From: Scyliorhinus canicula
Lineage: Eukaryota
Assembly: GCF_902713615.1 (NCBI RefSeq)
Contig: NC_052163.1
Coordinates: 11,852,248-11,916,247, forward strand
DNA: 64,000 nt
Direction of reading: 5' to 3'
The position numbers and the translations under genes are program-made. Positions 4,277 through 64,000 of this stretch are shown here, in pieces. The notes under the pieces are model-generated. The model was not told the DNA's origin. It saw only the letters and a list, made by a program, of their open reading frames with translations, and made no database searches. Position 1 is the first letter of the stretch. Every line of letters starts with the position of its first letter.

Positions 4277-5300
4277 GTTTCCAGGCCGGGTTGGGGTTTC
4301 CAGGCCGGGTTGGGGTTGGGGTATCCAGGCAGGGTTGGGGTTGGGGTTTCCAGGCCGGGTTGGGGTTTCCAGGCCGGGTTGGGGTTTCCAGGCCGGGTTG
4401 ACGTTTCCAGGCCGGGTTGGGGTTGGGGTTGGGGTATCCAGGCCGGGTTGGGGTTGGGGTTGGGGTATCCAGGCCGGGTTGGGGTTGGGGTTTCCAGGCC
4501 GGGTTGGGGTTGGGGTTGGGGTTGGGGTTTCCAGGCCGGGTTGGGGTTGGGGTTTCCAGGCCGGGTTGGGGTTTCCAGGCTGGGTTGGGGTTGGGGTTGG
4601 GGTATCCAGGCCGGGTTGGGGTTTCCAGGCCGGGTTGACGTTTCCAGGCCAGGTTGGGGTTGACGTTTCCAGGCCGGGTTGGGGTTGACGTATCCAGGCC
4701 GGGTTGGAGTTGACGTATCCAGGCCGGGTTGGGGTTGGGTTTTCCAGGCCGGGTTGGGGTTGACGTTTCCAGGCCGGGTTGGGGTTGACGTTTCCAGGCC
4801 GGGTTGGGGTTGACGTTTCCAAGCCGGGTTGGGGTTTCCAGGCCGGGTTGGGGTTGACGTTTCCAGGCCGGGTTGGGGTTGACGTTTTCAGGCCGGGTTG
4901 GGGTTGGGTTTTCCAGGCCGGGTTGGGGTTGACGTTTCCAGGCCGGGTTGGGGTTGACGTTTCCAGGCCGGGTTGGGTTTGACGTTTCCAGGCCGGGTTG
5001 GGGTTGGGTTTTCCAGGCCGGGTTGGGGTTGACGTTTCCAGGCCGGGTTGGGGTTGGGGTTGACGTATCCAGGCCGGGTTGGGGTTTCCAGGCCGGGCTG
5101 GGGTTGACATTTCCAGGCCGGGTTGGGTTTGACGTTTCCAGGCCGCGTTGGGGTTGACATTCCAGGCCGGGTTGGGGTTGACGTTTCCAGGCCGGGTTGG
5201 GGTTGGGTTTTCCAGGCCGGGTTGGGTTTGACGTTTCCAGGCCGCGTTGGGGTTGATGTATCCAGGCCGGGTTGGGTTTGACGTTTCCAGGCCGGGTGGG
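4277..5300 (+). repeat. G-rich minisatellite built from TTTCCAGGCCGGG / (GGGGTT)n / TGACG modules between the CpG island and the ARL16 ATG
   Basis: Direct inspection; about 19-37 bp variable units; produces the PTRPG/QPQPG repeat ORFs. Confidence 0.95.
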
Positions 5301-5398
5301 GATTTAACGGCCAGTGTTTCCTGTGCGACAATCGAGCAGCGACTTCTGACAACAATAATTATTAATTCTCCATCCCGCCGCCGATCAGCCCCGAGACA

Positions 5399-5459
5399 AT
5401 GTGTCTCCTGCTGGGAGTGACTGGAGTCGGCAAAACCCTGCTGCTGAAGAGACTGTACA
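5399..5459 (+). CDS. ARL16: ARL16 exon 1 (61 nt), ends at a U12 AT donor
   Basis: MCLLLGVTGVGKTLLLKRLY+A then |ATATCCTTC at 5460. Confidence 0.92.
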
Positions 5460-8400
5460 ATATCCTTCAAAATGTCCAAAATCCTTTAAACTGTACAACA
5501 TCCTTAAAACTGTACAACATCCTTAAAACTGTACAACATCCTTTAAACTGTACAATATCCTTTAAACTGTTCAGACTGTCCAATAACCTTTAAACTGTAC
5601 AATATCCTTTAAACTGTGCAGACTGTGTACAATATCCTTTACACTGTACAGACTGTCCAATATCCTTTAAACATTAAAGACTGTCCAATATCCCTTACAC
5701 TGTACAGACTGTCCAATACCCTTTAAACTGTACAGACTGTCCAATACCCTTTAAACTGTACAGACTGTCCAATATCCTTTAAACTGTACAAAATATCCAA
5801 TATCCTTTAAACTGTACAGCCTGTCCAATACCCTTTAAACTGTACAGAGTGTCCAATATCCTTTACACTGTACAGAGTGTCCAATACCCTTTAAACTGTA
5901 CAAACTGTCCAATATCTTTTAAACTGTACAGACTGTACAATATCCTTTAAACTGTACAGACTGTCCAATATCCTTTAAACTGTACAAAATATCCTTTAAA
6001 CTGTACAAAATATCCAATATCCTTTAAACTGTACATACTGTACAATATCCTTTAAACTGTACAGACTACAATATCCTTTACACTGTACAGACTGTCCAAT
6101 ACCCTTTACACTGTACAGTCTGTCCAATATCCTTTAAACTGTACAGACTGTCCAATATTCTTTAAACTGTACACAGTGCAATATCCTTTAAGCTGTACAG
6201 ACTGTCCAATATCCTTTACACTGTACAGACTGTCCAATATCCTTTAAACTGTACAGACTGTCCAATATCCTTTAAACTGTACAAAATATCCAATATCCTT
6301 TAAACTGTACAGCCTGTCCAATACCCTTTAAACTGTACAGAGTGTCCAATATCCTTTACACTGTACAGAGTGTCCAATACCCTTTAAACTGTACAAACTG
6401 TCCAATATCCTTTAAACTGTACAGACTGTACAATATCCTTTAAACTGTACAGACTGTCCAATATCCTTTAAACTGTACAAAATATCCAATATCCTTTAAA
6501 CTGTACAAAATATCCAATATCCTTTAAACTGTACATACTGTACAATATCCTTTAAACTGTACAGACTACAATATCCTTTACACTGTACAGACTGTCCAAT
6601 ACCCTTTACACTGTACAGTCTGTCCAATATCCTTTAAACTGTACAGACTGTCCAATATTCTTTAAACTGTACACAGTGCAATATCCTTTAAGCTGTACAG
6701 ACTGTCCAATATCCTTTACACTGTACAGACTGTCCAATATCCTTTAAACTGTACAGACTGTCCAATATCCTTTACACTGTACAGACTGTCCAATATCCTT
6801 TAAACTGTACAGACTGTCCAATATCCTTTACACTGTACAGAGTGTCCAATACCCTTTAAACTGTACAGACTGTACAATATCCTTTAAACCATAGAGACTC
6901 TCCAATATCCTTTACACTGTACAGTGTGTACAATATCTGTTGAACTGTACAGAGTATACAATATCCTTTAAACCATAGATACTATATAAGATCCTTTAAA
7001 CTACAGAGTCTACAATATCCTTTCACCTGTACAGACTGTCCAATATTCTTTAAACTGTACACAGTGCAATATCCTTTAAGCTGTACAGACTGTCCAATAT
7101 CCTTTACACTGTACAGACTGTCCAATATCCTTTAAACTGTACAGACTGTCCAATATCCTTTACACTGTACAGACTATCCAATATCCTTTAAACTGTACAG
7201 ACTGTCCAATATCCTTTACACTGTACAGAGTGTCCAATACCCTTTAAACTGTACAGACTGTACAATATCCTTTAAACCATAGAGACTCTCCAATATCCTT
7301 TACACTGTACAGTGTGTACAATATTTGTTGAACTGTACAGAGTATACAATATCCTTTAAACCATAGATACTATATAAGATCCTTTAAACTACAGAGTCTA
7401 CAATATCCTTTCACCTGTACAGACTGTACGATATCCTTTAAACTATAGAGACTACAATATTATTTAAACTATACAGGCTGTACAATATCCGTTAACCATA
7501 CAGACTGTACAGTATCCTTTAAATATCATTTTAAATAACATTCAGTCTGTGATTTTAAATAGCTTTCAGTCTGACTGATTTTAAGTAGTATTCTGTCCTA
7601 TGGTAATTTTCAACAGCATTCATTCTGACTGTAATTTAAAATCGCATTTGATCTGATTGTTTTTAAATAGGATTCCGCTTGACTGATTTTAAATAATATT
7701 CAGAATCAGTCTGTTATTTTAAATATCCCTCAGCCTGGGTGTGATTTTAAATTGCATTCAGTCTGATTTTGATTTGAAATAACATTCATTCTGACTGTGA
7801 TTGGAAATAGCATTCAGTCTGACTGTGATTGGAAATAGTATTCAGTCTGACTGTGATTGGAAATAGTATTCAGTCTGACTGTGATTGGAAATAGCATTAA
7901 TTCGGCATGAGACTTTAAATACTATTCAATCTGAATGAGATTTTTTTTTTCTTTTTTTTAAAATTTAGATTAGCCAATTATTTTTTCCAATTAAGGGGCA
8001 ATTTAGCGTGGCCAATCCACCTACTCTGCACATTTTTGGGTTGTGGGGGCGAAACCCACACAGACATGGGGAGAACGTGCAAACTCCACACGGACAGTGA
8101 CCCAGAGCCGGGATCGAACCTGGGACCTCAGCGCCGTGAGGCGGCTGTGCTAACCACTAGGCCACCGTGCTGCCCTCCTGAATGAGATTTTAAATAGCAT
8201 TCAGTCTGGGGGAGATTTTACAAAACTATTAAGTATTTGTGTGCCATTTTTTTGCAACCTCGGGGTTTTCCAAAGTGCTTTAGTCAATGAAGTACTCATG
8301 AAGTATTGTCACTGTTCCAAGCGGAGTGTGATTATAAACTTTACACAAACTATTATTTGCCATGCAAATTGTGTGATTTTAAATACCAGACCACTTGAAA

Positions 8401-36100: not shown

Positions 36101-39100
36101 GAAAGCAAGGAATAAAAGCACCCACAGTTAAAAAAAAAGAAGAAAACACTTTCTCCTAAACTAGGGTTGCCAATTCTGCTTTGACATATTCCTGGAGAAT
36201 GTTTGGAGAGACACATGATCACATGACACATGAATTTGTTCATCGTTTACAAATGTTATTGCGTTTGTTTTAGCAAGTCCTTTAATATTCCTGGGCTCGG
36301 ACTAAAATTTTGACTTAATCTTAATTCAATTGCTCTCAAATCCCACAACGGAATTCCGGGGGATGAATTGCTCGAATCCTGGGGCAGGACACACATTACA
36401 AAGCGAGTTCCAATGATCACAGATCTGTAATGTTGATTGTTTTTCGCTCTCTCTCTCTCTATAGATACTGCCATACCTGCCGAGTACCTCTAGCATTTTC
36501 TGTTTTTTGTTTGTTATGTGCAGAAAATACGGAGGCTGGGGATTGAGGGTGATTTAGAGATGTGGATCAGAAATTGGCTAGTTGAAAGAAGACAGAGAGT
36601 GGTAGTTGATGGAAATGTTCAGAATGGAGTTCAGTTACGAGTGGCGTACCACAAGGATCTGTTCTGGGGCCGTTGCTGTTTGTCATTTTTATAAATGACC
36701 TAGAGGAGGGCGCAGAAGGATGGGTGAGTAAATTTGCAGACGACACTAAAGTCGGTGGAGTTGTAGACAGTGCGGAAGGATATTGCAGGTTACAGAGGGA
36801 CATAGATAAGCTGCAGAGCTGGGCTGAGAGGTGGCAAATGGAGTTTAATGTGGAGAAGTGTGAAGTGATTCACTTTGGAAAGAATAACAGGAATGCGGAA
36901 TATTTGGCTAATGGTAAAATTCTTGGTAGTGTGGATGAGCAGAGGGATCTCGGTGTCCATGTACATAGATCCCTGAAAGTTGCCACCCAGGTTGATAGGG
37001 TTGTGAAGAAGGCCTATGGTGTGTTGGCCTTTATTGGTAGAGGGATTGAGTTCCGGAGCCATGAGGTCATGTTGCAGTTGTACAAAACTCTAGTACGGCC
37101 GCATTTGGAGTATTGCGTACAGTTCTGGTCGCCTCATTATAGGAAGGACGTGGAAGCCTTGGAACGGGTGCAGAGGAGATTTACCAGGATGTTGCCTGGT
37201 ATGGAGGGAAAATCTTATGAGGAAAGGCTGATGGACTCGAGGTTGTTTTCGTTAGAGAGAAGAAGGTTAAGAGGTGACTTAATAGAGGCATACAAAATGA
37301 TAAGAGGGTTAGATAGGGTGGACAGCGAGAGCCTTCTCCCGCGGATGGAGGTGGCTAGCACGAGGGGACATAGCCTTAAATTGAGGGGTAATAGATATAG
37401 GACAGAGGTCAGAGGTGGGTTTTTTACGCAAAGAGTGGTGAGGCCGTGGAATGCCCTACCTGCAACAGTAGTGAACTCGCCAACATTGAGGGCATTTAAA
37501 AGTTTATTGGATAAGCATATGGATGATAAGGGCATAGTGTAGGTTAGATGGCCTTTAGTTTTTTTCCAGGTCGGTGCAACATCGAGGGCCGAAGGGCCTG
37601 TACTGCGCTGTATCGTTCTATGTTCTATACCGCAATGAGAAGCAGTCTCTCCTTCTCCCCATCGTTCAAATTTGTCTTCCCCTCAGTAATTGACATGCAC
37701 AAATCAGGAATGTTTCTTTCAAATCATCAAATATCGCTCGAGGGATCAGTCATTCTGGGAGACACTGGATAAGGAATCTCACAAAACCCAAGGTTTACAC
37801 ACTTGCACCACGTGTGTACAAGTACTGAAATGCCCAACAGTATCCAACCCATTTATTTCAAATGCAAAATGCAACTAGCCAACCTGCGATTGCTCAGTTC
37901 GTGACCAGAGCGCTGGTCAGACCCTGGCAGAAAAGTGGGCTTCATTCTGGAGTAGCTGCTGCTAAGCCAGACGTCCCGACTGCCGGCGAATGGGGAGCTG
38001 CCCCCTCCCCCAACACGGGCAGAGTGACTGGCGTGTGAATGGGGAGCTGCCCCCCCCACGGGCAGAGTGACTGGCGTGTGAATGGGGAGCTGCTCCCCTC
38101 CCGCCCCCTCACAAGGGCAGAGTGACTGGCAGCGAATGGAGAGCTGCCCCCCCCCCCCACCCCCCACAGGCAGAGTGAGTGGCGTGTGAATGGGGAGCTG
38201 CCCCTACAGGCAGAGTGACTGGCGGCGAATGGGGAGCTGCCCCCTCCCCCAACACGGGCAGAGTGACTGGCGTGTGAATGGGGAGCTGCCCCCTCCCCCA
38301 ACACGGGCAGAGTGACTGGCGTGTGAATGGAGAGCTGCCCCCCCCCCCCCCAACGCGGGCAGAGTGACTGGCGTGTGAATGGGGAGCTGCCCCCCCACGG
38401 GCAGAGTGACTGGCGTGTGAATGGGGAGCTGCCCCCCCCACGGGCAGAGTGAGTGGCGTGTGAATGGAGAGCTGCCCCCCCCCCCCCCAACGCGGGCAGA
38501 GTGACTGGCGTGTGAATGGAGAGCTGCCCCCCCACGGGCAGAGTGAGTGGCGTGTGAATGGAGAGCTGCTCCCCCACGGGCAGAGTGACTGGCGGAGAAT
38601 GGAGAGCTGCCCCCCCCACCCAACACGGGCAGAGTGACTGGCGTGTGAATGGAGAGCTGCCCCCCCCCCCAACGTGGGCAGAGTGACTGGCGTGTGAATG
38701 GAGAGCTGCTCCCCCACGGGCAGAGTGACATGGCGGAGAATGGAGAGCTGCAGAGCTGCCCCCCCCCCCCACAGGCAGAGTGACTGGCGTGTGAATGGAG
38801 AGCTGCCCCCCACAGGCAGAGTGACTGGCGTGTGAATGGAGAGCTGCTCCCCTCCCACCCCCCCCCCCCCCCCCCCCCCACCCCACAGGCAGAGTGACTG
38901 GCGGCGAATGGAGAGCTGCCCCCCCCCCACCCCCACAGGCAGAGTGACTGGCGGCGAATGGAGAGCTGCCCCCCCCCCCAACCCCCCCCACCCCCACAGG
39001 CAGAGTGAGTGGCGTGTGAATGGAGAGCTGCCCCCCCCCACGGGCAGAGTGACTGGCGGTGAATGGCGAGCTGCCCCCCCCCCCCCCAGGCAGAGTGACT

Positions 39101-42100
39101 GGCGGTGAATGGAGAGCTGCCCCCCCACGGGCAGAGTGACTAGCGGAGAATGGAGAGCTGCCCCCCCCCCCCCACGGGCAGAGTGACTGGCGTGTGAATT
39201 GAGAGCTGCCCCCCCCCACGGGCAGAGTGACTGGCGTGTGAATGGAGAGCTGCCCCCACCCCCCCCCACGGGCAGAGTGACTGGCGTGTGAATGGAGAGC
39301 TGCCCCCCCCCCACGGGCAGAGTGACTAACGGAGAATGGAGAGCTGCCCCCCCCCCCCACGGGCAGAGTGACTGGCGTGTGAATGGAGAGCTGCCCCCCC
39401 CCCCCCCCCCCACGGGCAGAGTGACTGGCGTGTGAATGGAGAGCTGCCCCCCCCCCCCCCCCCCCACGGGCAGAGTGACTAGCGGTGAATGGAGAGCTGC
39501 CCCCCCCCCCCCCCACACAGGCAGAGTAAGTGGCGTGTGAATGGAGAGCTGCCCCCCCACGGGCAGAGTGACTGGCGTGTGAATGGGGAGCTGCCCCCCC
39601 CACGGGCAGAGTGACTGGCGTGTGAATGGCGAGCTGCCCCCCCCCCCCCCCCCCACGGGCAGAGTGACTAGCGGTGAATGGAGAGCTGCCCCCCCCCCCC
39701 CCCCCCCCACACAGGCAGAGTAAGTGGCGTGTGAATGGAGAGCTGCCCCCCACGGCAGAGTGACTGGCGTGTGAATGGGAGCTGCCCCCCCACGGGCAGA
39801 GTGACTGGCGTGTGAATGGCGAGCTGCCCCCCCCACGGGCAGAGTGACTGGCGTGTGAATGGAGAGCTGCCCCCCCCCCCCCCCCCCCCACGGGCAGAGT
39901 GACTGGCGGAGAATGGAGAGCTGCCCCAACACGGGCAGAGTGAGTGGCGTGTGAATGGCGAGCTGCCCCCCCCCACGGGCAGAGTGACTGGCGGAGATGG
40001 AGAGCTGCCCCCCCACGGGCAGAGTGACTGGCGTGTGAATGGGGAGCTGCCCCCCCCACGGGCAGAGTGAGTGGCGTGTGAATGGAGAGCTGCCCCCCCC
40101 CCCCCACGGGCAGAGTGACTGGCGGAGAATGGAGAGCTGCCCCCCCCCACGGGCAGAGTGACTGGCGTGTGAATGGAGAGCTGCCCCCCCACGGGCAGAG
40201 TGACTGGCGGAGAATGGAGAGCTGCCCCCCCCCCCACGGGCAGAGTGACTGGCGTGTGAATGGAGAGCTGCCCCCCCCCCCCACGGGCAGAGTGACTGGC
40301 GTGTGAATTGAGAGCTGCCCCCCCCCACGGGCAGAGTGACTGGCGTGTGAATGGAGAGCTGCCCCCACCCCCCCCCACGGGCAGAGTGACTGGCGTGTGA
40401 ATGGAGAGCTGCCCCCCCCCCCACGGGCAGAGTGACTAACGGAGAATGGAGAGCTGCCCCCCCCCCCCACGGGCAGAGTGACTGGCGTGTGAAGGGAGAG
40501 CTGCCCCCCCCCCCCCCCCACGGGCAGAGTGACTAGCGGTGAATGGAGAGCTGCCCCCCCCCCCACACAGGCAGAGTAAGTGGCGTGTGAATGGAGAGCT
40601 GCCCCCCCACGGGCAGAGTGACTGGCGTGTGAATGGGGAGCTGCCCCCCCCACGGGCAGAGTGACTGGCGTGTGAATGGCGAGCTGCCCCCCCCACGGGC
40701 AGAGTGACTGGCGTGTGAATGGAGAGCTGCCCCCCCCCCCCACGGGCAGAGTGACTGGCGGAGAATGGAGAGCTGCCCCCAACACGGGCAGAGTGAGTGG
40801 CGTGTGAATGGCGAGCTGCCCCCCCCACGGGCAGAGTGACTGGCGGAGAATGGAGAGCTGCCCCCCCCACGGGCAGAGTGACTGGCGTGTGAATGGGGAG
40901 CTGCCCCCCCCACGGGCAGAGTGAGTGGCGTGTGAATGGAGAGCTGCCCCCCCCCCCACGGGCAGAGTGACTGGCGGAGAATGGAGAGCTGCCCCCCCCC
41001 ACGGGCAGAGTGACTGGCGTGTGAATGGAGAGCTGCCCCCCCACGGGCAGAGTGACTGGCGGAGAATGGAGAGCTGCCCCCCCCCCCCACGGGCAGAGTG
41101 ACTGGCGTGTGAATGGAGAGCTGCCCCCCCCCCCCCCCCCCCCCACGGGCAGAGTGGTGAAACCAGCCCCAGATTTAGATCAAATGCCACCACATCCATT
41201 GAGAAGATGCAACCCTTCAAACTCGTTGGACACGTTAATGTCTCTGATCAGAAATGACAGCTCCCATTGTGGTAAGAGTGGGATGCAATGATTCACAAAC
41301 CTGTCCCGGTAAAGCGGACGATGTTCGAACACACCCTGTTCAGGAACGGCTGGTGGCCGGATTGTTCCGGAAGCTGGTTCTTCATCATTTTCAGCAGCAC
41401 AAGCAGGAAGAGACAGACCAGGCCTAGCACGAGGTCACCGATCCTGCAGCAAGGTGGAGGGCAAAGTAAAGCAATACATGGAAACTGAAACAGAAGGGCC
41501 ACCCAGCCCATCAAGGCTGTGCTAGCTCAAAACCCGTTTTCCTTCTATTCCATTATCACCTAATTTCCTCTTAAAAAGACAAAGATTGACTTGCGCTGTG
41601 GTAACATGCTCCATTTTATCAACTGAAAATAATTCTTCAACCTCCTGCTTAGCGTTTATGGTATTGTTACCGACTTAATTCGACCCCAGTTCCCCAGCAA
41701 CTGTTGGTGATTTACCACCAACCCCCCCCCCCCCCCCCCCCCAACATTGTAGTCAGTTTACCGGCACAAAGAGGCCTTTCAGCCCATCGTGTCTGGGCTA
41801 GCCATCGAGCACCCATTTTCCAGTACTTGGTCCTTGTATGCCATGCCGTTGAGATCGAAATGCTTCCCAAATGTTTCAGGTTCCCACCTCTACCAGCGAG
41901 TTCCAGGTTCCCACCTCCCTCTGGGTGAAAACATTTTTTCTTCAAATCCTCTGCCCCTCACTTTAATCTATGCCCCCTGGTTATTGACCCCTCTACTAAA
42001 GGGGCCCCTGCATAGTTTGTCAGTAAGCCCCTGCCGGCTAGCTCCGCCCACAGGGAGCAGTATAAATATCCATGAGGTCTCCCGAGCTGCCATTTTACAG

Positions 42101-55531: not shown

Positions 55532-58500
55532 GTGAGTGGACCATTCCTATTTTCCTCCTTCCACCCCCCTCCCCATGGTCTTCTCCAATGATTACAATGC
55601 CTTTACAGCATAGTAACAGGCCATTCGGCCCAACTGCTCCATGTTGGTCCATTCCAACCTACTCACACCTCACCCTATCAGATTCACCTTCGATACCCTT
55701 GTCCCTCGTGTTGATCTGTCTTCCCCACAAGCACATCTGGCCCTGGAATTGCCAACGTGCCGGTCCTGCTCCTGGGCTCCAGCACCAGAATCCAGGCTAA
55801 CTTTGCAGAGTCCTGATGTGGAGATGCCAGCGTTGGACTGGGGTGGGCAGAGTAAGAAGCCTTACTAACACCAGGTTAAAGTCCAACAGCTTTGTTTCGA
55901 ATCACTAGCTTTTGGAGCGCTGCTCCTCAGAGGAAGGAGCTGCGCTCCGAAGGCTAGTGATTCGAAACAAACCTGTTGGACTTTAACCTGGTGTTGTAAG
56001 ATTTCTGGAGTCCAACAGAAGAGTTAGGAGCAGAGTAGGCAATTCAGACCCTTTGAGCCTCCTCCGCCATTCAATCAGATCACGGCTGATCATGTGCTGG
56101 TTTCAAATCCACCTACCTATCTGTTCCCCATATCCCTTTAACCCATGGGGGTGCTGTGCTACCAAGGGTGGTATGGGGGAGGGGGCAGGGGTAGTGGAGG
56201 GGGGCAGTGCTGCCAGGGGGGGTTGTTCAATGTGATTGGCGAGCGTAGTTTAGATTGTACTCACTGACAATGATTTGCTTTTCAATAATCTCTCCATTGT
56301 GTGTGCTGTGACAGCTGATGACGCTGGCTTTGAGACTGAGGTGTATAACAACACTGCCATCAGGACCCCGAACCTCAACCAATTGGCAAAACGCAGCGTC
56401 ATCTTCCGAAATGCCTTCTCGTCCGTCAGCAGCTGCTCGCCCAGTCGTTCTGCCATTTTAACAGGCCTGCCACAGGTACGGACACTGACCCTCCGCCATT
56501 TTAACTGGCCTGTCACAGGTACGGACACTGACCCTCCGCCATTTTAACTGGCCTGTCGCAGGTACGGACACTGACCCTCCGCCATTTAAAAAAATTTAGA
56601 GTACCCAATTATTTTTTCCCAGTTAAGGGGCAATCTAGCGTGGCCAATCCATCTAACCTGCACATCTTTGGGTTGTGGGGGTGAGACCCACGCAGACACG
56701 GGGAGAACGAGCAAACTCCATTTTGTGAGGGGCACGAAGAATCCAGCCCGAGTTTTCAGGATACAAAGAAAAAAACATTTATTTACAATAACATATATAC
56801 AGCAGCAACAACTTCCCTTGCTGCTCACTCCTCTCTCTCTGCTGGTTCCAAACTGGCCAGCTCTATTTATGCAGGGAGTCTGCTAATGATTTCTCTGCCC
56901 CCCTCATTGGGGAAGCTCATACTCCCACAGGATTGTGGGATTGTCATTAGTCTCCAGCCAATGGTAAGCAGGCAGGTTGTAACACTCCACACGGACAGTG
57001 ACCCGGGGCTGGGATTGAACCCGGGTCCTCGGCGCCGTGTGGCAGCAGTGCTAACCACTGCGTCACCGTACCGCCCCACCCTCCACCATTTTAACTGGCC
57101 TCCCAGTGGTATGTTCGCTGACTAAATGTTAACCTCCGGCTCCAGTCACTGCTGTGTTTAGCGGATCACCACAGCCCTGAAAGTTGGGTCAAAGCTTTTG
57201 CTGGTTGTCTACAAGGAGGGCGTCCAGTTCCCGTCGCTCACTTAACGAATGCTTTAAGCAGGTTCTAGCAGTATTTACGTCACCCGCACCGGGGACATAC
57301 ATCTGAGACTTGGAGCCCTCCGTTCACAAACAGCCCGGGTCCAGTGGGCCCTTTTTCTGAGTGAGGCAGTTGGGGTTTTGGGGATGTGAAGTAAAGCTGG
57401 CTCGATGGAGTTGAGGTGACGATCGAGCAAGGTTGATGCAAGAGGCTGGCTGGGCAGCTCTGAGGGGCTGAATGGCCTCCACCTTGATGGCAGTTTTGTG
57501 CTCGGTGAGATGTTGTGATTGATGTTGTGACCCCGGGGAGGAAAGAATCAGCCTTGTGTCCTCTTCCCCCCCCCCCCCCCCCCAGAGGACGCAGGCCACC
57601 CTGTGTAGAGACCCCCTCCGTGGCCACATTTATTTATAATATTGATTTTTGAAGCCTCCATTTCAAGGTGCGCTCGCCCGCCCCTTCCTACCCTACCTCT
57701 GCTCACTCCCCTTCTGGGAAAAACTGTGCCAGTGTGCAGTAGTCGGGCTCCGTCAAGGACCCAAGAAGAAATGCTGGAAAATCTCAGCAGGTCTGGCAGC
57801 ATCTGCAGGGAGAGAAAAGAGCTAACGTTTCAAGTCCAGGTGACTCTTTGTCAAAGCTAACATCAAGGACCTGGAAATAGCGCTTGCCCGGGTTTAGAAA
57901 CAAAGCAATAAGATTGGGGACCGAGTGGAGCTCAGTACCTGACAAGACAGTCTGTGCGGGTTACATGTAGCGTTAACTGAAATGGAGAGAGGTTTTGAGG
58001 ATGCGAGGGTGATTGATTGGCTGGGTTTGTGATTGCAGCATCAGAATGGGATGTATGGACTGCATCAGGCTGTTCACCATTTCAATTCCTTCGACACTGT
58101 CAGAAGTTTGCCATTTCTGCTCAGACAGTCACAGATCAGGACAGGTAAGGGTTTGGACATTGGCACAGAGACTCCATTTCTAAAATGCTTTCAACTTTCA
58201 CTCTGTTTAAAATGTTACCTGAATCCCACTTCTTTCACAGCGAATAACATACTCCCACGCCGCGTCTTGCCCTGCCTGTGACACGTTACTGCACCATGTG
58301 TTACCCTGCGTGTGACATGCTACTGCACCATGTTACCTTGCACGCGACACACTCCTGCCCCGTGTGTTAGCCTGCGTGACATGCTCCTGCCTGCGTGTGG
58401 CATACCCCTGCCCTTGCCCCATGTGTTGCCCTGTATGTAGAATGCCCCTGCCCGCTGTTTGCCTGGCGTGTGGCACGTCCGTTTCCCGTGTATTATTAGG

Positions 58501-61500
58501 TATTTATCCCCGATTCTTGTGGAGATGTGACATTGCTTAAGACATCATTGAAAGTTGCCCCTCTGTTAATTCGTTGAACTGTAAATTCCCTTTGCTGCAA
58601 ATATTAATCTGTCTTCACAAATACTCTTTTATGTTTTCGGTCTCAATTATAATTTGTAGTTTTATTTATTTTTCTATATGTACGGCCTGGCCCCGAATGA
58701 CCATTGTTCCTCTCGTTTCTCCTCATTTATTTTGATCATTCAGTTGTACTCTTTTTCAGGAATAATCGGGAAGAAGCACATTGGCCCTGAATCGGTCTAT
58801 CCCTTCGATTATTCAGAGACGGAAGAAAACCATTCTATCCTGCAGGTGGGGAGGAATATCACAAAAATCAAACTGCTCGTCCGGGAGTTCCTGCACAGCA
58901 CCGGAGACAGGTATAACCTCCCAACACCGGAGACAGGTATAACCCCAACACCGGAGACAGGTATAACCTCCCAACACCGGAGACAGGTATAACCTCCCAA
59001 CACCGGAGACAGGTATAACCTCCCAACACCGGAGACAGGTATAACCTCCCAACACCGGAGACAGGTATAACCTCCCAACACCGGAGACAGGTATAACCCC
59101 AACACCGGAGACAGGTATAACCCGGGCAGCTCCCAACACCGGAGACAGGTATAACCCGGGCACCTCCCAACACTGGAGACAGGTATAACCTCCCAACACC
59201 GGAGACAGGTATAACCTCCCAACACCGGAGACAGGTATAACCCCAACACCGGAGACAGGTATAACCCGGGCAGCTCCCAACACCGGAGACAGGTATAACC
59301 CGGGCACCTCCCAACACTGGAGACAGGTATAACCTCCCAACACCGGAGACAGGTATAACCTCCCAACACCGAGACAGGTATAACCTCCCAACACCGGAGA
59401 CAGGTATAACCCCAACACCGGAGACAGGTATAACCCCAACACCGGGGACAGGTATAACCTCCCAACACCGGGGACAGGTATAACCTCCCAACACCGGAGA
59501 CAGGTATAACCCCAACACCGGAGACAGGTATAACCCCAACACCGGAGACAGGTATAACCTCCCAACACCGGAGACAGGTATAACCTCCCAACACCGGAGA
59601 CAGGTATAACCTCCCAACACCGGAGACAGGTATAACCTCCCAACACCGGAGAAAGGTATAACCTCCCAACACCGGAGACAGGTATAACCTCCCAACACCG
59701 GAGACAGGTATAACCCCAACACCGGAGACAGGTATAACCTCCCAACACCGGAGACAGGTATAACCTCCCAACACCGGAGACAGGTATAACCCCAACACCA
59801 GGAGACAGGTATAACCCCAACACCGGAGACAGGTATAACCTCCCATCACCGGAGACAGGTATAACCACCCAACACCGGAGACAGGTATAACCTCCCAACA
59901 CCGGAGACAGGTGTAACCTCCCAGCACCGGAGACAGGTGTAACCTCCCAACACCGGAGACAGGTATAACCTCCCAACACCGGAGACAGGTATAACCCGGG
60001 CAGCTCCCAACACCGGGGACAGGTATAACCTCCGAGCACCGGAGACAGGTGTAACCTCCCAGCACCGGAGACAGGTATAACCCGGGCAGCTCCCAACACC
60101 GGGGACAGGTATAACCTCCCAACACCGGGGACAGGTATAACCTCCCAACACCGGAGACAGGTATAACCTCCCAACACCGGAGACAGGTATAACCTCCCAG
60201 CACCGGAGACACGTATAACCTCCCAACACCGGAGACAGGTATAACCTCCCAGCACCGGAGACAGGTATAACCTCCCAACACCGGAGACAGGTATAACCTC
60301 CCAACACCAGAGACAGGTATAACCTCCCAATACCGGAGACAGGTATAACCTCCCAACACCGGAGACAGGTATAACCCGGGCAGCTCCCAACACCGGGGAC
60401 AGGTATAACCTCCCAACACCGGGGACAGGTATAACCTCCCAACACCGGAGACAGGTATAACCTCCCATCACCGGAGACAGGTATAACCACCCAACACCGG
60501 AGACAGGTATAACCTCCCAACACCGGAGACAGGTATAACCTCCCAACACCGGAGACAGGTATAACCTCCCAACACCGGAGACAGGTATAACCCGGGCAGC
60601 TCCCAACACCGGGGACAGGTATAACCTCCGAGCACCGGAGACAGGTGTAACCTCCCAGCACCGGAGACAGGTATAACCCGGGCAGCTCCCAACACCGGGG
60701 ACAGGTATAACCTCCCAACACCGGGGACAGGTATAACCTCCCAACACCGGAGACAGGTATAACCTCCCAACACCGGAGACAGGTATAACCTCCCAATACC
60801 GGAGACAGGTATAACCTCCCAACACCGGGGACAGGTATAACCTCCCAACACCGGAGACAGGTATAACCCCAACACCGGAGACAGGTATAACCCCAACACC
60901 GGAGACAGGTATAACCCCAACACCGGAGACAGGTATAACCTCCCAGCACCGGAGACACGTATAACCTCCCAGCACCGGAGACAGGTATAACCTCCCAACA
61001 CCGGAGACAGGTATAACCTCCCAACACCAGAGACAGGTATAACCTCCCAATACCGGAGACAGGTATAACCTCCCAACACCGGAGACAGGTATAACCTCCC
61101 AACACCGGAGACAGGTATAACCCGTGCAGCTCCCAACACCGGAGACAGGTATAACCTCCCAACACCGGAGACAGGTGTAACCTCCCAGCACCGGAGACAG
61201 GTATAACCTCCCAGCACCGGAGACAGGTATAACCTCCCAACACCGGGGACAGGTATAACCTCCCAACACCGGAGACAGGTGTAACCTCCCAGCACCGGAG
61301 ACAGGTATAACCCGGGCAGCTCCCAACACCGGGGACAGGTATAACCTCCCAACACCGGGGACAGGTATAACCTCCCAACACCGGAGACAGGTGTAACCTC
61401 CCAGCACCGGAGACAGGTATAACCTCCCAGCACCGGAGACAGGTATAACCTCCCAACACCGGGGACAGGTATAACCTCCCAACACCGGAGACAGGTATAA

Positions 61501-63758
61501 CCCGGGCAGCTCCCAACACCGGAGACAGGTATAACCTCCCAACACCGGAGACAGGTATAACCTCCCAACACCGGAGACAGGTATAACCTCCCAACACCGG
61601 CAACAGGTATAACCTCCCAACACCGGAGACAGGTATAACCTCCCAACACCGGAGACAGGTATAACCTCCCAACACCGGGGACAGGTATAACCTCCCAACA
61701 CCGGGGACAGGTATAACCCCAACACCGGAGACAGGTATAACCCCAACACCGGAGACAGGTATAACCTCCCAGCACCGGAGACGGGTATAATCCCAACACC
61801 GGAGACAGGTATAACCTCCCAGCACCGGAGACAGGTATAACCCCAACACCAGAGACAGGTATAACCTCCCAGCACCAGAGACAGGTATAACCTCCCAACA
61901 CCGGAGACAGGTATAACCTCCCAACACCGGAGACAGGTATAACCTCCCAACACCGGGGACAGGTATAACCTCCCAGCACCGGAGACAGGTATTACCTCCC
62001 AACACCGGAGACAGGTATAACCTCCCAACACCGGAGACGGGTATAACCCCAGCACCGGAGACAGGTATAACCTCCCAACACCGGAGACAGGTATAACCTC
62101 CCAACACCGGAGACAGGTATAACCTCCCAACACCGGGGACAGGTATAACCTCCCAGCACCGGAGACAGGTATAACCTCCCAGCACCGGAGACAGGTATAA
62201 CCCGGGCAGCTCCCAACGCCTCCAGTTTCATTGATCCAAATCTCACAGCAGCCTCGGGGGAGGACGGGGCAGTGTGTCCGAATCCTGGGTTTGGGGGGAT
62301 GTAGAGATCTACCTTGCGAACACTAAAACTCAGTTGAAATTTGAGTTAACACATCGGTGCAAACAAGAATTGTTTATTGCCTCTGTTTGATCACAATTGA
62401 GAATCACTTAAATCTTATACTCTAACAGGTCTGGCTGGCAAAAGGACCCAAAGAGAAGTAATTTGTAGACAATTTAACTTTCAAATGATACAGAAATGAT
62501 TTTTTTCCTTACGGCAAACAGTTTGCATTTACTTCAAGAGTTAGAGTGGAAAAGTGAAAATGTAGAGATAGAGAATAGTTTCAATCAAAGTATGGAATGA
62601 TCCAGGATAAAGATGGCTGTACGGACTATCAGAGTTATACTAAATAATGTCAGTCTTTAGCCATCTAGCTACACCCCTATGTAATCCTATTTGGTTTGGG
62701 TTAAAACCAAATGAGTTTGATTTGATGGTTAGCTGTCAGTCTTTAATGTGCAACATTAACTTGAAATGTTTCATAAATGAATTCTTGTACGTGTTATGGA
62801 ATGCGATTTTCTGCTGTTATCGCGACTGGCTTGAACTGACATCTTGCTGACTTAGCTGTTATCAACATTGAGAACATTTGGGGGCCTCACGGTAGCATGG
62901 TGGTTAGCATCAATGCTTCACAGCTCCAGGGTCCCAGGTTCGATTCCCGGCTGGGTCACTGTCTGTGTGGAGTCTGCACGTCCTCCCTGTGTGTGCGTGG
63001 GTTTCCTCCGGGTGCTCCGGTTTCCTCCCACAGTCCAAAGATGTGCGGGTTAGGTGGATTGGCCATGCTAAATTGCCCGTAGTGTAAGGTTAATGGGGGA
63101 TTGTTGGGTTACGGGTATACGGGTTACGTGGGTTTAAGTAGGGTGATCATTGCTCGGCACAACATCGAGGGCCGAAGGGCCTGTTCTGTGCTGTACTGTT
63201 CTATAAATTCTATAAAACAATGGTGCCTTGATATTACCATGTTGTTGCTATGCTGTTGCCATAGAGCCTGCCCTGTCCTTGGACACTGTCTTGTCAAAGT
63301 GTTTGTTTTAATCTATCAGGTTCTTCTGTGTTTCTGTTGAATTGTGTGTTTTCTACATCATTTAAATTTGTGAATTTAAATTTGTGCGGTGTCATGCTGT
63401 TTTGTAAGCAGTATGTTTTGAGATGACCTGAGGTTGAGTGAATGTAAAATGGGTATTTAGTAAGACGGGGGTTAATGTTTAGCTAACTTTTACCTGTTAG
63501 GTGTGTTAGAAAACAGTTGGTGTCTACAGGGGGGTGGGCTCTGGGCGATTCTCCCAGTGTCTCAGGCACCCCGTTTATCTCTCTCTGCTTTTTATTTCTA
63601 GGCCATTCTTCCTATACGTTGCCTTCCATGACCCGCACCGGTGCGGACATTCCCACCCCCAGTACGGGAACTTCTGTGAGAAGTTTGGGAATGGGGAGAG
63701 TGGAATGGGCTGGATTCCAGACTGGCAGCCACAGCATTACACATCGGAGCAGGTCAAG
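55444..63758 (+). CDS. SGSH: SGSH (N-sulfoglucosamine sulfohydrolase, sulfamidase), 5' part: join(55444..55531,56315..56475,58039..58144,58760..58910,63602..63758); continues right of the window
   Basis: Signal peptide, NLLLIIADDAGFE, sulfatase formylglycine motif [47 protein letters not shown]; exon sizes 88/161/106/151/157 in phase. Confidence 0.97.
55814..56000. mobile_element. Penelope-like terminal-repeat derivative forming a ~140-bp inverted repeat (55861-56000)
   Basis: AACACCAGGTTAAAGTCCAACAG...GAATCACTAGC arm and its reverse complement; central degenerate hammerhead-like cores. Confidence 0.65.
56315..56475 (+). CDS. SGSH: SGSH exon 2 (contains the CSPSR active-site motif at 56434-56448)
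   Basis: (A)[20 protein letters not shown]...[16 protein letters not shown] |gtacgg. Confidence 0.97.
56449..56588 (+). repeat. 43-bp tandem triplication of the SGSH exon 2 end plus donor
   Basis: CAG|GTACGG at 56476, 56519 and 56562. Confidence 0.92.
56724..56983 (-). mobile_element. Solo-LTR-like element nested in a SINE in SGSH intron 2
   Basis: TGT...ACA termini; minus-strand ATAAATA and AATAAA; interrupts the SINE at AAACTCCA/CTCCACACGG. Confidence 0.55.
58039..58144 (+). CDS. SGSH: SGSH exon 3
   Basis: [35 protein letters not shown] |gtaagg. Confidence 0.97.
58760..58910 (+). CDS. SGSH: SGSH exon 4
   Basis: (G)[49 protein letters not shown](R) |gtataa. Confidence 0.96.
58899..62217 (+). 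repeat. 3.3-kb minisatellite of the SGSH exon 4 junction (26-bp unit CACCGGAGACAG|GTATAACCTCCCAA, with 24- and 34-bp variants), ~125 copies
   Basis: First unit overlaps the last 12 nt of exon 4. Confidence 0.97.
62880..63203 (+). mobile_element. HE1/V-SINE-type SINE
   Basis: Same architecture; identical 61-aa pseudo-ORF to the copy at 53245-53430 except one residue. Confidence 0.9.
63602..63758 (+). CDS. SGSH: SGSH exon 5
   Basis: [52 protein letters not shown] |gtaaga. Confidence 0.97.
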
Positions 63759-63777
63759 GTAAGAATAGGGACAAACC

Positions 63778-64000
63778 GTCACACACAGTCACACTGAGAG
63801 TGACACAGTCACACACAGTCACACTGAGGGTGACACAGTCACACTGAGAGTGACACAGTCACATACAGTCACACTGAGGGTGACACAGTCACATACAGTC
63901 ACACTGAGGGTGACACAGTCACACACAGTCACACTGAGAGTGACACAGTCACACACAGTCACACTGAGGGTGACACAGTCACACACAGTCACACTGAGGG
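63778..64000. repeat. 20/30-bp minisatellite (GTCACACACAGTCACACTGAGRGTGACACA) starting 20 nt after the SGSH exon 5 donor, runs off the window
   Basis: Direct inspection. Confidence 0.93.

What the first reader, a model, noticed from the sequence alone, without database searches (positions are those of the whole stretch)
58899..62217. About 125 copies of the SGSH exon 4 donor junction (CAG|GTATAA) fill 3.3 kb of intron 4
Seen: the repeat unit is the last 12 nt of exon 4 plus the first 14 nt of the intron, so most decoys have the same -12..+14 context as the true donor. Donors 2-4 (+26, +50, +76 nt) change the phase, and all later ones include the TAA at 58990-58992, so only the first donor gives sulfamidase. 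Established: CAG|GT is the signature of recursive splice sites and of intron gain by tandem duplication; exon definition favours the donor nearest the upstream acceptor; dense U1 sites can suppress premature polyadenylation. Inference: the locus is a natural experiment in donor choice among identical sites, and copy number could tune the level of a lysosomal enzyme.
Basis: partly seen in the sequence, partly recalled or inferred. Interest (0 to 1): 0.75.

Follow-up and report, generated by a model that had tools for sequence, protein, structure and literature searches.

The report
Splice-donor minisatellite in shark SGSH intron
The end of exon 4 of a shark lysosomal enzyme gene (SGSH) plus its splice signal has been copied about 125 times in a row into the next intron; this is a very large example of a repeat type already known from human genes, and it is most likely tolerated rather than useful.

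Summary
A 26-bp minisatellite lies at 58899-62217 (TRF: 124.8 copies). Its first unit spans the SGSH exon 4/intron 4 junction. It holds 125 GT donors, 112 with the exact CAG|GTATAA.

The frame claims hold: +26, +50 and +76 shift the frame, and an in-frame TAA lies at 58990. Only donor 58911 joined to exon 5 (63602) gives a protein colinear with solved sulfamidase.

One claim is overstated. Only 41 of 124 decoys share the full -12..+14 context.

The kind is known. Human F7, IFI6 and CBS carry exon-boundary minisatellites, and in F7 only the most upstream donor is used (PMC1557585). This scan has already reported many such arrays on other pieces of the same genome, and one (ARL16) in this window.

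RNA evidence is indirect. Three poly(A) RNA runs cover exons 2-4 on the expected strand, with no read in array units 4-9. The splice-joint tables were swamped by SINE reads, so donor use was not read directly.

DNA word depth in the array is about 30 times the unique depth, against an assembly artefact.

Nothing here supports recursive splicing, polyadenylation control or dosage tuning.

New here: SGSH exon 2's donor junction is also tandemly copied (3.2 copies).

Verdict: new member of a known kind.

The parts
58760..58910 (+). SGSH exon 4 (151 nt; ends in phase 2 with AG of an Arg codon)
   Evidence: Translation. Aligns to 4mhx_A residues 120-166, E 7.5e-19. Acceptor and donor read. RNA reads lie here on the expected strand.
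58908..58916 (+). True donor CAG|GTATAA (GT at 58911-58912). A weak site: 6 contiguous base pairs with the U1 5' end.
   Evidence: duplex -7.2 kcal/mol, against -14.0 for the consensus, -11.5 for the exon 3 donor and -9.5 for the exon 5 donor.
58899..62217 (+). 26-bp minisatellite of 125 units. The first unit spans the exon 4/intron 4 junction, followed by 124 decoy donors. Multi-unit blocks are duplicated inside the array.
58990..58992 (+). First in-frame stop (TAA) if reading continues from exon 4. It is included by every donor from the fifth onward.
   Evidence: Sequence; donor offsets.
62218..63601 (+). Unique remainder of intron 4 (1384 nt), ending in a pyrimidine-rich tract and AG at 63600-63601
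63602..63758 (+). SGSH exon 5 (157 nt), donor AAG|GTAAGA at 63759
   Evidence: Aligns to 4mhx_A residues 170-216, E 4.8e-26.
56314..56475 (+). SGSH exon 2 (holds the CSPSR active-site motif), donor CAG|GTACGG at 56476
   Evidence: RNA depth about 10-13 in two runs.
56452..56587 (+). Second donor-junction repeat in the same gene. The unit is 43 bp (last 24 nt of exon 2 plus first 19 nt of intron 2), 3.2 copies. Decoy donors lie at 56519 (+43) and 56562 (+86), both out of frame.
   Evidence: TRF (96% matches); sequence; U1 pairing is identical for all three sites.
58039..58144 (+). SGSH exon 3 (106 nt), donor CAG|GTAAGG at 58145

Best explanation
This is an exon-boundary (splice-donor) minisatellite.

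Origin. A short segment spanning the ancient SGSH exon 4/intron 4 junction was duplicated in tandem. It then expanded inside the intron by replication slippage and unequal exchange to about 125 units, which is 70% of the 4.7-kb intron. Because the first unit stays continuous with the exon, the gene still works as long as the spliceosome takes the most upstream donor.

How it most likely works. The first donor wins by position, not by sequence. It is the site that pairs across the 151-nt exon with the exon 4 acceptor (exon definition, or 5'-to-3' 'oriented scanning' as shown for human F7). Any use of donors 2-4 shifts the frame. Any later donor includes a stop. Such products would be removed by nonsense-mediated decay. 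The array itself is most likely neutral or slightly costly baggage, not a regulator.

Shown: the anatomy, the frames, the old age of the junction, the multi-copy state in raw DNA data, and the absence of array sequence from poly(A) RNA.

Inferred: the exclusive or near-exclusive use of the first donor, the growth mechanism, and neutrality.
For: Anatomy:
- The first unit spans the junction and the donor is reiterated 124 times.

The junction is ancestral, so the repeat derives from it:
- Exons 4 and 5 are colinear with 4mhx_A residues 120-166 and 170-216. The three residues between them are the end of exon 4 plus the split Arg codon.
- Genomic read-through fragments from many other animals end exon 4 at the same place.
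- Contig L001 has a 72-nt intron at that position.

Typical minisatellite growth:
- An 8-unit block occurs twice.
- A 300-nt block recurs 596 nt away at 97% identity.
- Several 4-6-unit blocks are repeated.
- The exon-proximal quarter is the most homogeneous.

No selection signal on the decoys:
- GT is kept in 125 of 125 units, but 13 of 26 columns are equally invariant.
- The donor 9-mer holds 7 of 22 variant types in 9 of 26 columns.

RNA:
- In three oligo-dT RNA runs, reads cover exons 2, 3 and 4 on one strand only. Flanking intron bins are empty.
- Depth is 0 in 58972-59140.
- 72% of simulated 100-nt reads from the rest of the array would map to that stretch.
- By my rough count, stable transcripts carrying large parts of the array are therefore below about 3-5% of SGSH mRNA.

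DNA:
- Contig word depth of run X1 is about 2-5.6 in unique parts and 126 in 58972-59070.
- The assembly predicts a mean 31-mer multiplicity of 38 there.

Precedent:
- In human F7 IVS7, identical reiterated donors are functional, yet only the most upstream is used.
- IFI6, CBS, LMNB2 and PDGF carry similar minisatellites (PMC1557585).
Against: - Donor use was not read directly.
- Only about 15 RNA reads lie on exon 4, so use of donors 2-4 (+26 to +76) at up to roughly a third of transcripts cannot be excluded.
- Nonsense-mediated decay would hide such products anyway.
- In IFI6 and CBS the first two pseudo-sites are used, so some leakage is plausible here.
- Neutrality is inferred from lack of signal in a young, homogenised array, where the test has little power.
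- Three of the 12 arrays in this window start at a donor junction, against about 0.06-0.26 expected by chance. Simple random birth of arrays does not explain this.
Confidence: 0.75

Rival explanations
1. Dosage rheostat. A measurable share of transcripts uses decoy donors. These products are frameshifted or carry a stop and are destroyed by nonsense-mediated decay. Copy number or splicing-factor levels would then set how much productive SGSH mRNA is made. Alternatively, the dense U1 sites raise splicing or transcription efficiency.
For: - All 125 units keep GT and 112 keep the full 9-mer.
- The true donor is weak (6 bp with U1), so its sequence gives it no advantage over the decoys.
- In IFI6 and CBS the two proximal pseudo-sites are used (PMC1557585).
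- The RNA depth here is too low to exclude proximal decoy use.
Against: - No RNA read lies in array units 4-9 in three runs.
- The donor positions show no excess conservation over the other columns.
- In F7, identical pseudo-sites do not compete at all.
- Earlier notes of this scan report first-donor-only use at several other such arrays in this genome (not tested here).
- A housekeeping lysosomal enzyme has no obvious need for such a device.
Confidence: 0.1
2. Recursive splicing platform. Each unit's CAG|GT acts as a combined acceptor and donor, so the intron is removed stepwise. Splicing from the true donor to any unit's CAG regenerates the same junction, so recursion would leave no trace in mRNA. 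It could even repair products of decoy use.
For: - Each unit has CAG directly followed by GT.
- Pyrimidine content of the 20 nt upstream of the unit's AG is 0.5, no worse than that of the real exon 3 acceptor (0.5).
Against: - The intron is only 4.7 kb. From my own knowledge, vertebrate recursive sites are described in very long introns and have strong pyrimidine tracts.
- The exon 4 and exon 5 acceptors here have pyrimidine content 0.75 and 0.9.
- No nascent-RNA or lariat data were available.
Confidence: 0.04
3. Assembly artefact or dispersed satellite. The array is over-extended by the assembler, or it is a copy of a genome-wide satellite that only by chance resembles the exon end.
For: - Long arrays of near-identical units are hard to assemble.
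- No read spanning the whole array was seen here.
- Read laying refuses stretches with more than 12 copies.
Against: - Raw-data word depth of run X1 in the array is about 30 times the unique depth. That is close to the multiplicity of 38 predicted from the assembly and not far above it, so there is no large pool of copies elsewhere.
- Twenty runs from 7 studies hold 21-40% of the stretch's words.
- The unit matches the exon end for 12-17 nt, and the exon end is conserved across animals.
- The exact 9-mer occurs nowhere else in the window.
Confidence: 0.04

Closest known systems
Human F7 intron 7 (IVS7) 37-bp VNTR (Borensztajn et al. 2006, PMC1557585)
   Same: - It is a minisatellite whose first monomer spans the exon-intron boundary, so the authentic donor is followed by identical pseudo-donors.
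- Only the most upstream donor is used physiologically.
- The donor is non-consensus.
   Different: - F7 has 5-9 copies; here there are 125.
- The unit is 37 bp with 4 exonic nt; here it is 26 bp with 12.
- The donor is TGG|GTGGGT; here it is CAG|GTATAA.
- F7 was dissected with 50 constructs; here donor use is only inferred.
- F7 is known to be polymorphic; polymorphism was not tested here.
Human IFI6 (6-16) intron 2 and CBS intron 13 minisatellites (as summarised in PMC1557585)
   Same: The splice donor is reiterated many times (25 pseudo-sites in IFI6; 15-20 repeats in CBS) directly behind the true donor.
   Different: [quoted passage not shown] Here, use of +26 or +50 would shift the frame. 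It was neither seen nor excluded.
Other splice-donor minisatellites noted by this scan in the same genome (LAMTOR1, several MHC class I genes, GEMIN5, TAF5, ARL16)
   Same: The layout is the same: exon end plus donor copied tens to hundreds of times into the following intron. Those reports say only the first donor is used.
   Different: - The genes and units differ.
- Those are AI notes. I checked only the ARL16 array, by eye, because it lies in this window.
- SGSH is the only case I know of here with two donor junctions of one gene affected.
Intron gain by tandem duplication of an AGGT-containing segment (Hellsten et al. 2011, PMC3265369; potato RdRp, PMC4974935)
   Same: A tandem duplication that includes AG|GT creates extra splice-site copies.
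   Different: In those cases the duplication lies inside an exon and creates a new intron. Here the intron is ancient and the duplication only lengthens it.
Recursive splice sites
   Same: The motif is CAG directly followed by GT.
   Different: No strong pyrimidine tract, a short intron, and no evidence of stepwise removal.

Membership tests
Exon-boundary (splice-donor) minisatellite, F7 IVS7 type | Tandem array with a unit of roughly 10-100 bp | tested here: met
   Period 26, 124.8 copies, score 4986.
Exon-boundary (splice-donor) minisatellite, F7 IVS7 type | The first monomer spans the exon-intron boundary, so the authentic donor sequence is reiterated in the intron | tested here: met
   The unit is 12 exonic plus 14 intronic nt. 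There are 112 exact copies of the 9-mer and 42 exact copies of the -12..+14 context.
Exon-boundary (splice-donor) minisatellite, F7 IVS7 type | The exon end is the original and the repeat is derived from it | tested here: met
   Exon 4 and exon 5 are colinear with 4mhx_A. The exon end is the same in fragments from many animals. Contig L001 has an intron at the same position.
Exon-boundary (splice-donor) minisatellite, F7 IVS7 type | mRNA uses the most upstream donor (or only the first few) | tested here: inconclusive
   RNA depth is present on exon 4 and is 0 in 58972-59140 in 3 runs (mapping simulation). The joint tables did not show the SGSH junctions, and about 15 reads cannot resolve donors 2-4.
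Exon-boundary (splice-donor) minisatellite, F7 IVS7 type | Copy number varies between individuals (VNTR) | not testable with these tools
   Short-read contigs cannot size a 3.3-kb array, and read laying refuses the full array.
Intron gain by tandem duplication | The intron is absent at this position in orthologues | tested here: not met
   The intron is present at the same phase-2 position in L001. The exon boundary is shared with other animals.
Recursive splice site | A strong acceptor (pyrimidine tract plus AG) fused to a donor, inside a very long intron | tested here: inconclusive
   Pyrimidine content upstream of the unit's AG is 0.5, against 0.75-0.9 for exons 4 and 5 but 0.5 for exon 3. 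The intron is 4.7 kb. There are no lariat or nascent-RNA data.
U1 'telescripting' protection of an intron | Cryptic polyadenylation signals in the intron that need suppression | tested here: not met
   No AATAAA or ATTAAA in 58911-63601. Variant hexamers were not scanned.

The most novel reading that the evidence does not exclude
In this shark genome, minisatellites may be seeded preferentially at splice junctions by a junction-linked mutational process, not placed at random and merely tolerated. SGSH has two of its donors seeded and a third array starting 20 nt after the exon 5 donor, so it would be a product of that process.

In this window, 3 of 12 arrays begin at a donor junction, against 0.06-0.26 expected by chance. 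Other reports of this scan list many more such arrays, including some seeded at acceptors.

If the process is real, these arrays would also give a genome-wide series of natural constructs (3 to over 300 identical donors, including a U12 case) for testing positional donor choice.
Probability: 0.2. Interest if true: 0.65.

Novelty: new member of a known kind. Interest (0 to 1): 0.3.

Why it matters
As a single locus it matters little. It repeats, on a larger scale, what human F7, IFI6 and CBS already show.

Its value is as a data point. With 124 spare donors behind a weak true donor, in an essential lysosomal enzyme gene, it is a stringent natural test of the rule that the most upstream donor wins.

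Together with the exon 2 triplication, the ARL16 array in the same window and the arrays reported elsewhere in this genome, it points to an unexplained excess of minisatellites born at exon edges in this shark.

It is also a practical warning for annotation. The array is stop-free on the minus strand, giving ORFs of up to 1106 aa, and it offers 124 false donors to gene predictors.

Tried and rejected
The SINE copies in intron 2 swamped the joint and loose-end tables, so no exon-exon junction was displayed. In hindsight a narrower stretch would have been better.

2. Comparison with other sharks:
- The genomic ORF across exon 4 was used as a protein query, and then a 179-aa bird fragment. No shark fragment came back.
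- The closest hit, P0003 (91% on exon 4), is an AT-rich non-shark contig without an array.
- P0002 lies on an invertebrate-like contig.
- The contig of P0001 gave no DNA.
- The third word search and the large representative search were not spent.

Exons were searched one by one.

4. P0154 looks like a human or primate sequence. I printed it once with other hits and did not use it further.

5. Zhuo et al. 2007 (PNAS, introns from tandem arrays) is not held. I cite it only as a title seen in reference lists.

6. Selection on the decoy donors was tested by column variability and gave no signal either way.

It was recomputed from the window.

8. The organism name is coded by the run tool. 'Small-spotted catshark' comes from earlier notes of this scan and was not verified by me.
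Full report
**What is there**

The window holds exons 2 to 5 of a sulfamidase (SGSH) gene on the + strand:

| Exon | Coordinates | Note |
|---|---|---|
| 2 | 56314-56475 | holds the CSPSR active-site motif |
| 3 | 58039-58144 | |
| 4 | 58760-58910 | |
| 5 | 63602-63758 | |

The exon 4 peptide aligns to residues 120-166 of the solved human enzyme 4mhx_A (E 7.5e-19). The exon 5 peptide aligns to residues 170-216 (E 4.8e-26). The three residues in between are the last two codons of exon 4 and the Arg codon split by the intron. The protein is therefore colinear only if the donor at 58911 is joined to the acceptor at 63601/63602.

**The array**

Tandem Repeats Finder reports 58899-62202, period 26, 124.8 copies, 89% matches, score 4986.

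- Parsing on the donor motif gives 125 GT sites. Unit lengths are 26 nt (93 units), 24 nt (17), 34 nt (12), 25 nt (2) and a truncated last unit that runs into unique sequence at 62218.
- The unit is the last 12 nt of exon 4 plus the first 14 nt of the intron.
- 112 units carry the exact CAG|GTATAA, a 9-mer found nowhere else in the window.
- Seven units have GTGTAA, six have other single changes, and all 125 keep GT.
- The array makes up 70% of the 4691-nt intron.
- Donor offsets from the true site are +26, +50, +76, +102 and so on. The first three shift the frame, and the first in-frame stop is the TAA at 58990-58992.
- One statement is too strong. Only 41 of the 124 decoys share the complete -12..+14 context with the true site. 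51 share -12..+9 and 111 share the 9-mer.

**Which came first**

The exon end is the original.

- Genomic read-through fragments of exon 4 from many other animals stop at the same codon. Several continue with Arg-Tyr, which implies AG|GTAT.
- One AT-rich, invertebrate-like contig (L001) has a 72-nt intron at exactly this phase-2 position.

So this is an old intron that has been lengthened, not an intron gained by duplication.

**How the array grew**

- An 8-unit block occurs twice (donors 59963 and 60559).
- A 300-nt stretch at 59816 recurs at 60412 with 97% identity.
- Several 4-6-unit blocks recur.
- The exon-proximal quarter is the most uniform: 52% of units are the commonest type, with 8 types in all. 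The distal quarter is the most varied: 28% and 15 types.

This is the usual picture of growth by slippage and unequal exchange.

**Is it real DNA**

- Twenty public runs from seven studies of the same coded organism hold 21-40% of the words of 58500-63800.
- In the contigs of run X1, word depth is about 2-5.6 in unique parts and 126 in 58972-59070. The assembly predicts a mean 31-mer multiplicity of 38 there.
- The raw data therefore contain the unit at about the assembled copy number, and not far more. This argues against both a gross assembly artefact and a large pool of the same satellite elsewhere.
- The tool warns that summed contig depth is not a copy number, so this is an order-of-magnitude check only. 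No read spanning the whole array was seen.

**RNA**

The one call allowed was made on 56200-59140 with three oligo-dT RNA runs and X1.

- Reads lie on exons 2, 3 and 4 in one orientation only, and the unique intron bins are empty.
- Exon 4 depth is 1.45, 3.86 and 3.62 in the three runs.
- The bin holding the last 38 nt of the exon and the first two units has depth 1.01, 0.79 and 0.89. That is about what reads stopping at 58910 would give.
- The two bins covering units 4-9 have depth 0 in all three runs.
- A simulation shows that 72% of 100-nt reads from the rest of the array would map full-length to the units included. Array-bearing poly(A) RNA from anywhere in the array should therefore have piled up there.
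- My rough estimate is that stable transcripts retaining large parts of the array are below about 3-5% of SGSH mRNA.

What I could not get is the direct count of junctions. The joint and loose-end tables were filled by reads from the abundant SINE copies in intron 2. With about 15 reads on exon 4, use of donors 2-4 cannot be excluded, and decay of such products would hide it.

**Donor strength and selection**

- The true donor and its copies pair with the U1 5' end at only six contiguous positions (-7.2 kcal/mol). The consensus gives -14.0, the exon 3 donor -11.5 and the exon 5 donor -9.5.
- The other duplicated donor, that of exon 2, is equally weak at -7.3.
- Nothing in the local sequence distinguishes the first site beyond position -12 to -17.
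- Across the 93 units of 26 nt, the nine donor columns carry 7 of the 22 variant types. That is neither fewer nor more than their share, and 13 of the 26 columns are invariant.
- The decoys are therefore neither being eroded nor visibly preserved.
- There is no AATAAA or ATTAAA in the intron. This removes the obvious reason for U1-mediated protection.

**Comparison with what is known**

Borensztajn et al. 2006 (PMC1557585) describe exactly this class: minisatellites whose first monomer spans an exon-intron boundary.

| Human gene | Repeat | Donor use reported |
|---|---|---|
| F7 IVS7 | 37 bp, 5-9 copies | only the most upstream |
| IFI6 (6-16) | 25 pseudo-sites | true donor plus the two proximal pseudo-sites |
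| CBS IVS13 | 15-20 repeats | true donor plus two pseudo-sites |
| LMNB2 | 100-bp monomer, 10-15 repeats | only the authentic donor |
| PDGF | 81-bp monomer, 16-18 repeats | only the authentic donor |

With 50 constructs they show that the F7 pseudo-sites are functional, yet only the most upstream site is chosen. They call this oriented scanning.

This scan has also reported the same layout many times on other pieces of this genome. Those reports name it the small-spotted catshark, which I did not verify. They cover LAMTOR1, several MHC class I genes, GEMIN5 and TAF5, plus ARL16 in this very window. Some arrays seeded at acceptors are reported as well. Those notes gave me the lead to the human examples, which I then checked in the paper.

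**What is new here**

- SGSH has a second, small donor-junction repeat. The last 24 nt of exon 2 plus the first 19 nt of intron 2 occur 3.2 times, with out-of-frame decoys at +43 and +86.
- Another array begins 20 nt after the exon 5 donor, and one lies 125 nt after the exon 3 donor.
- Minisatellites fill 18.6% of the window.
- 3 of its 12 arrays start at a donor junction. Random placement would give 0.06-0.26, with P between 4e-5 and 2e-3 depending on the number of donors assumed. This excess is not explained by simple tolerance and remains open.

**Verdict**

- It is a new and very large member of a known kind, most likely tolerated baggage handled by positional choice of the first donor (confidence about 0.75).
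- The rheostat reading (0.1), recursion (0.04) and artefact (0.04) are not excluded, but nothing seen here supports them.

Noticed in passing
window 56452-56587: The donor junction of SGSH exon 2 is also tandemly copied. The unit is 43 bp, with 3.2 copies at 96% identity. Decoy donors lie at 56519 and 56562, both out of frame. This is a second, young-looking case in the same gene.
   Followed up: partly
window 5452-7523 (and 7539-7943): An array of 19-28-bp units starts directly at the end of a short first exon. The exon begins with an ATG at 5399 and encodes a P-loop N-terminus. Each unit carries ATATCCTT, the U12-type donor motif.
   Followed up: partly
window 63778-64000 (runs off the end): A 30/50-bp tandem array begins only 20 nt after the SGSH exon 5 donor (63759). 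It does not include the junction.
   Followed up: no
window 58270-58390: A small 32-34-bp array (about 3.4 copies) lies 125 nt after the exon 3 donor.
   Followed up: no
window 58813-62133, minus strand: The minus strand of the array has almost no stop codons. The ORF listing gives ORFs of 1106, 779, 536, 503 and 284 aa. This is an artefact of the unit and could mislead gene callers. No RNA read was seen on either strand.
   Followed up: yes
whole window: Minisatellite arrays fill about 18.6% of the 64 kb. Large ones lie at 4277-5301, 22651-23408 (42 bp x 18) and 38007-41132 (43 bp x 68). None of these three has an obvious coding flank.
   Followed up: partly
window 56588-57090 and 57685-57882: SINE-like copies in SGSH intron 2 attract very many RNA reads on both strands and DNA word depths up to about a million. 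They are members of a highly abundant, transcribed repeat family.
   Followed up: no
protein P0001 (ENA contig of 67 kb, DNA not retrievable): In another, unidentified animal the read-through ORF across SGSH exon 4 shows the start of the exon, with the preceding residues, twice in a row. This suggests a tandem duplication at the acceptor side of the same exon.
   Followed up: no
window 56322: A C>T difference in exon 2 appears in RNA reads (4 of 13 in X23, 1 of 1 in X22, 0 of 12 in X24). It is probably a polymorphism between individuals.
   Followed up: no
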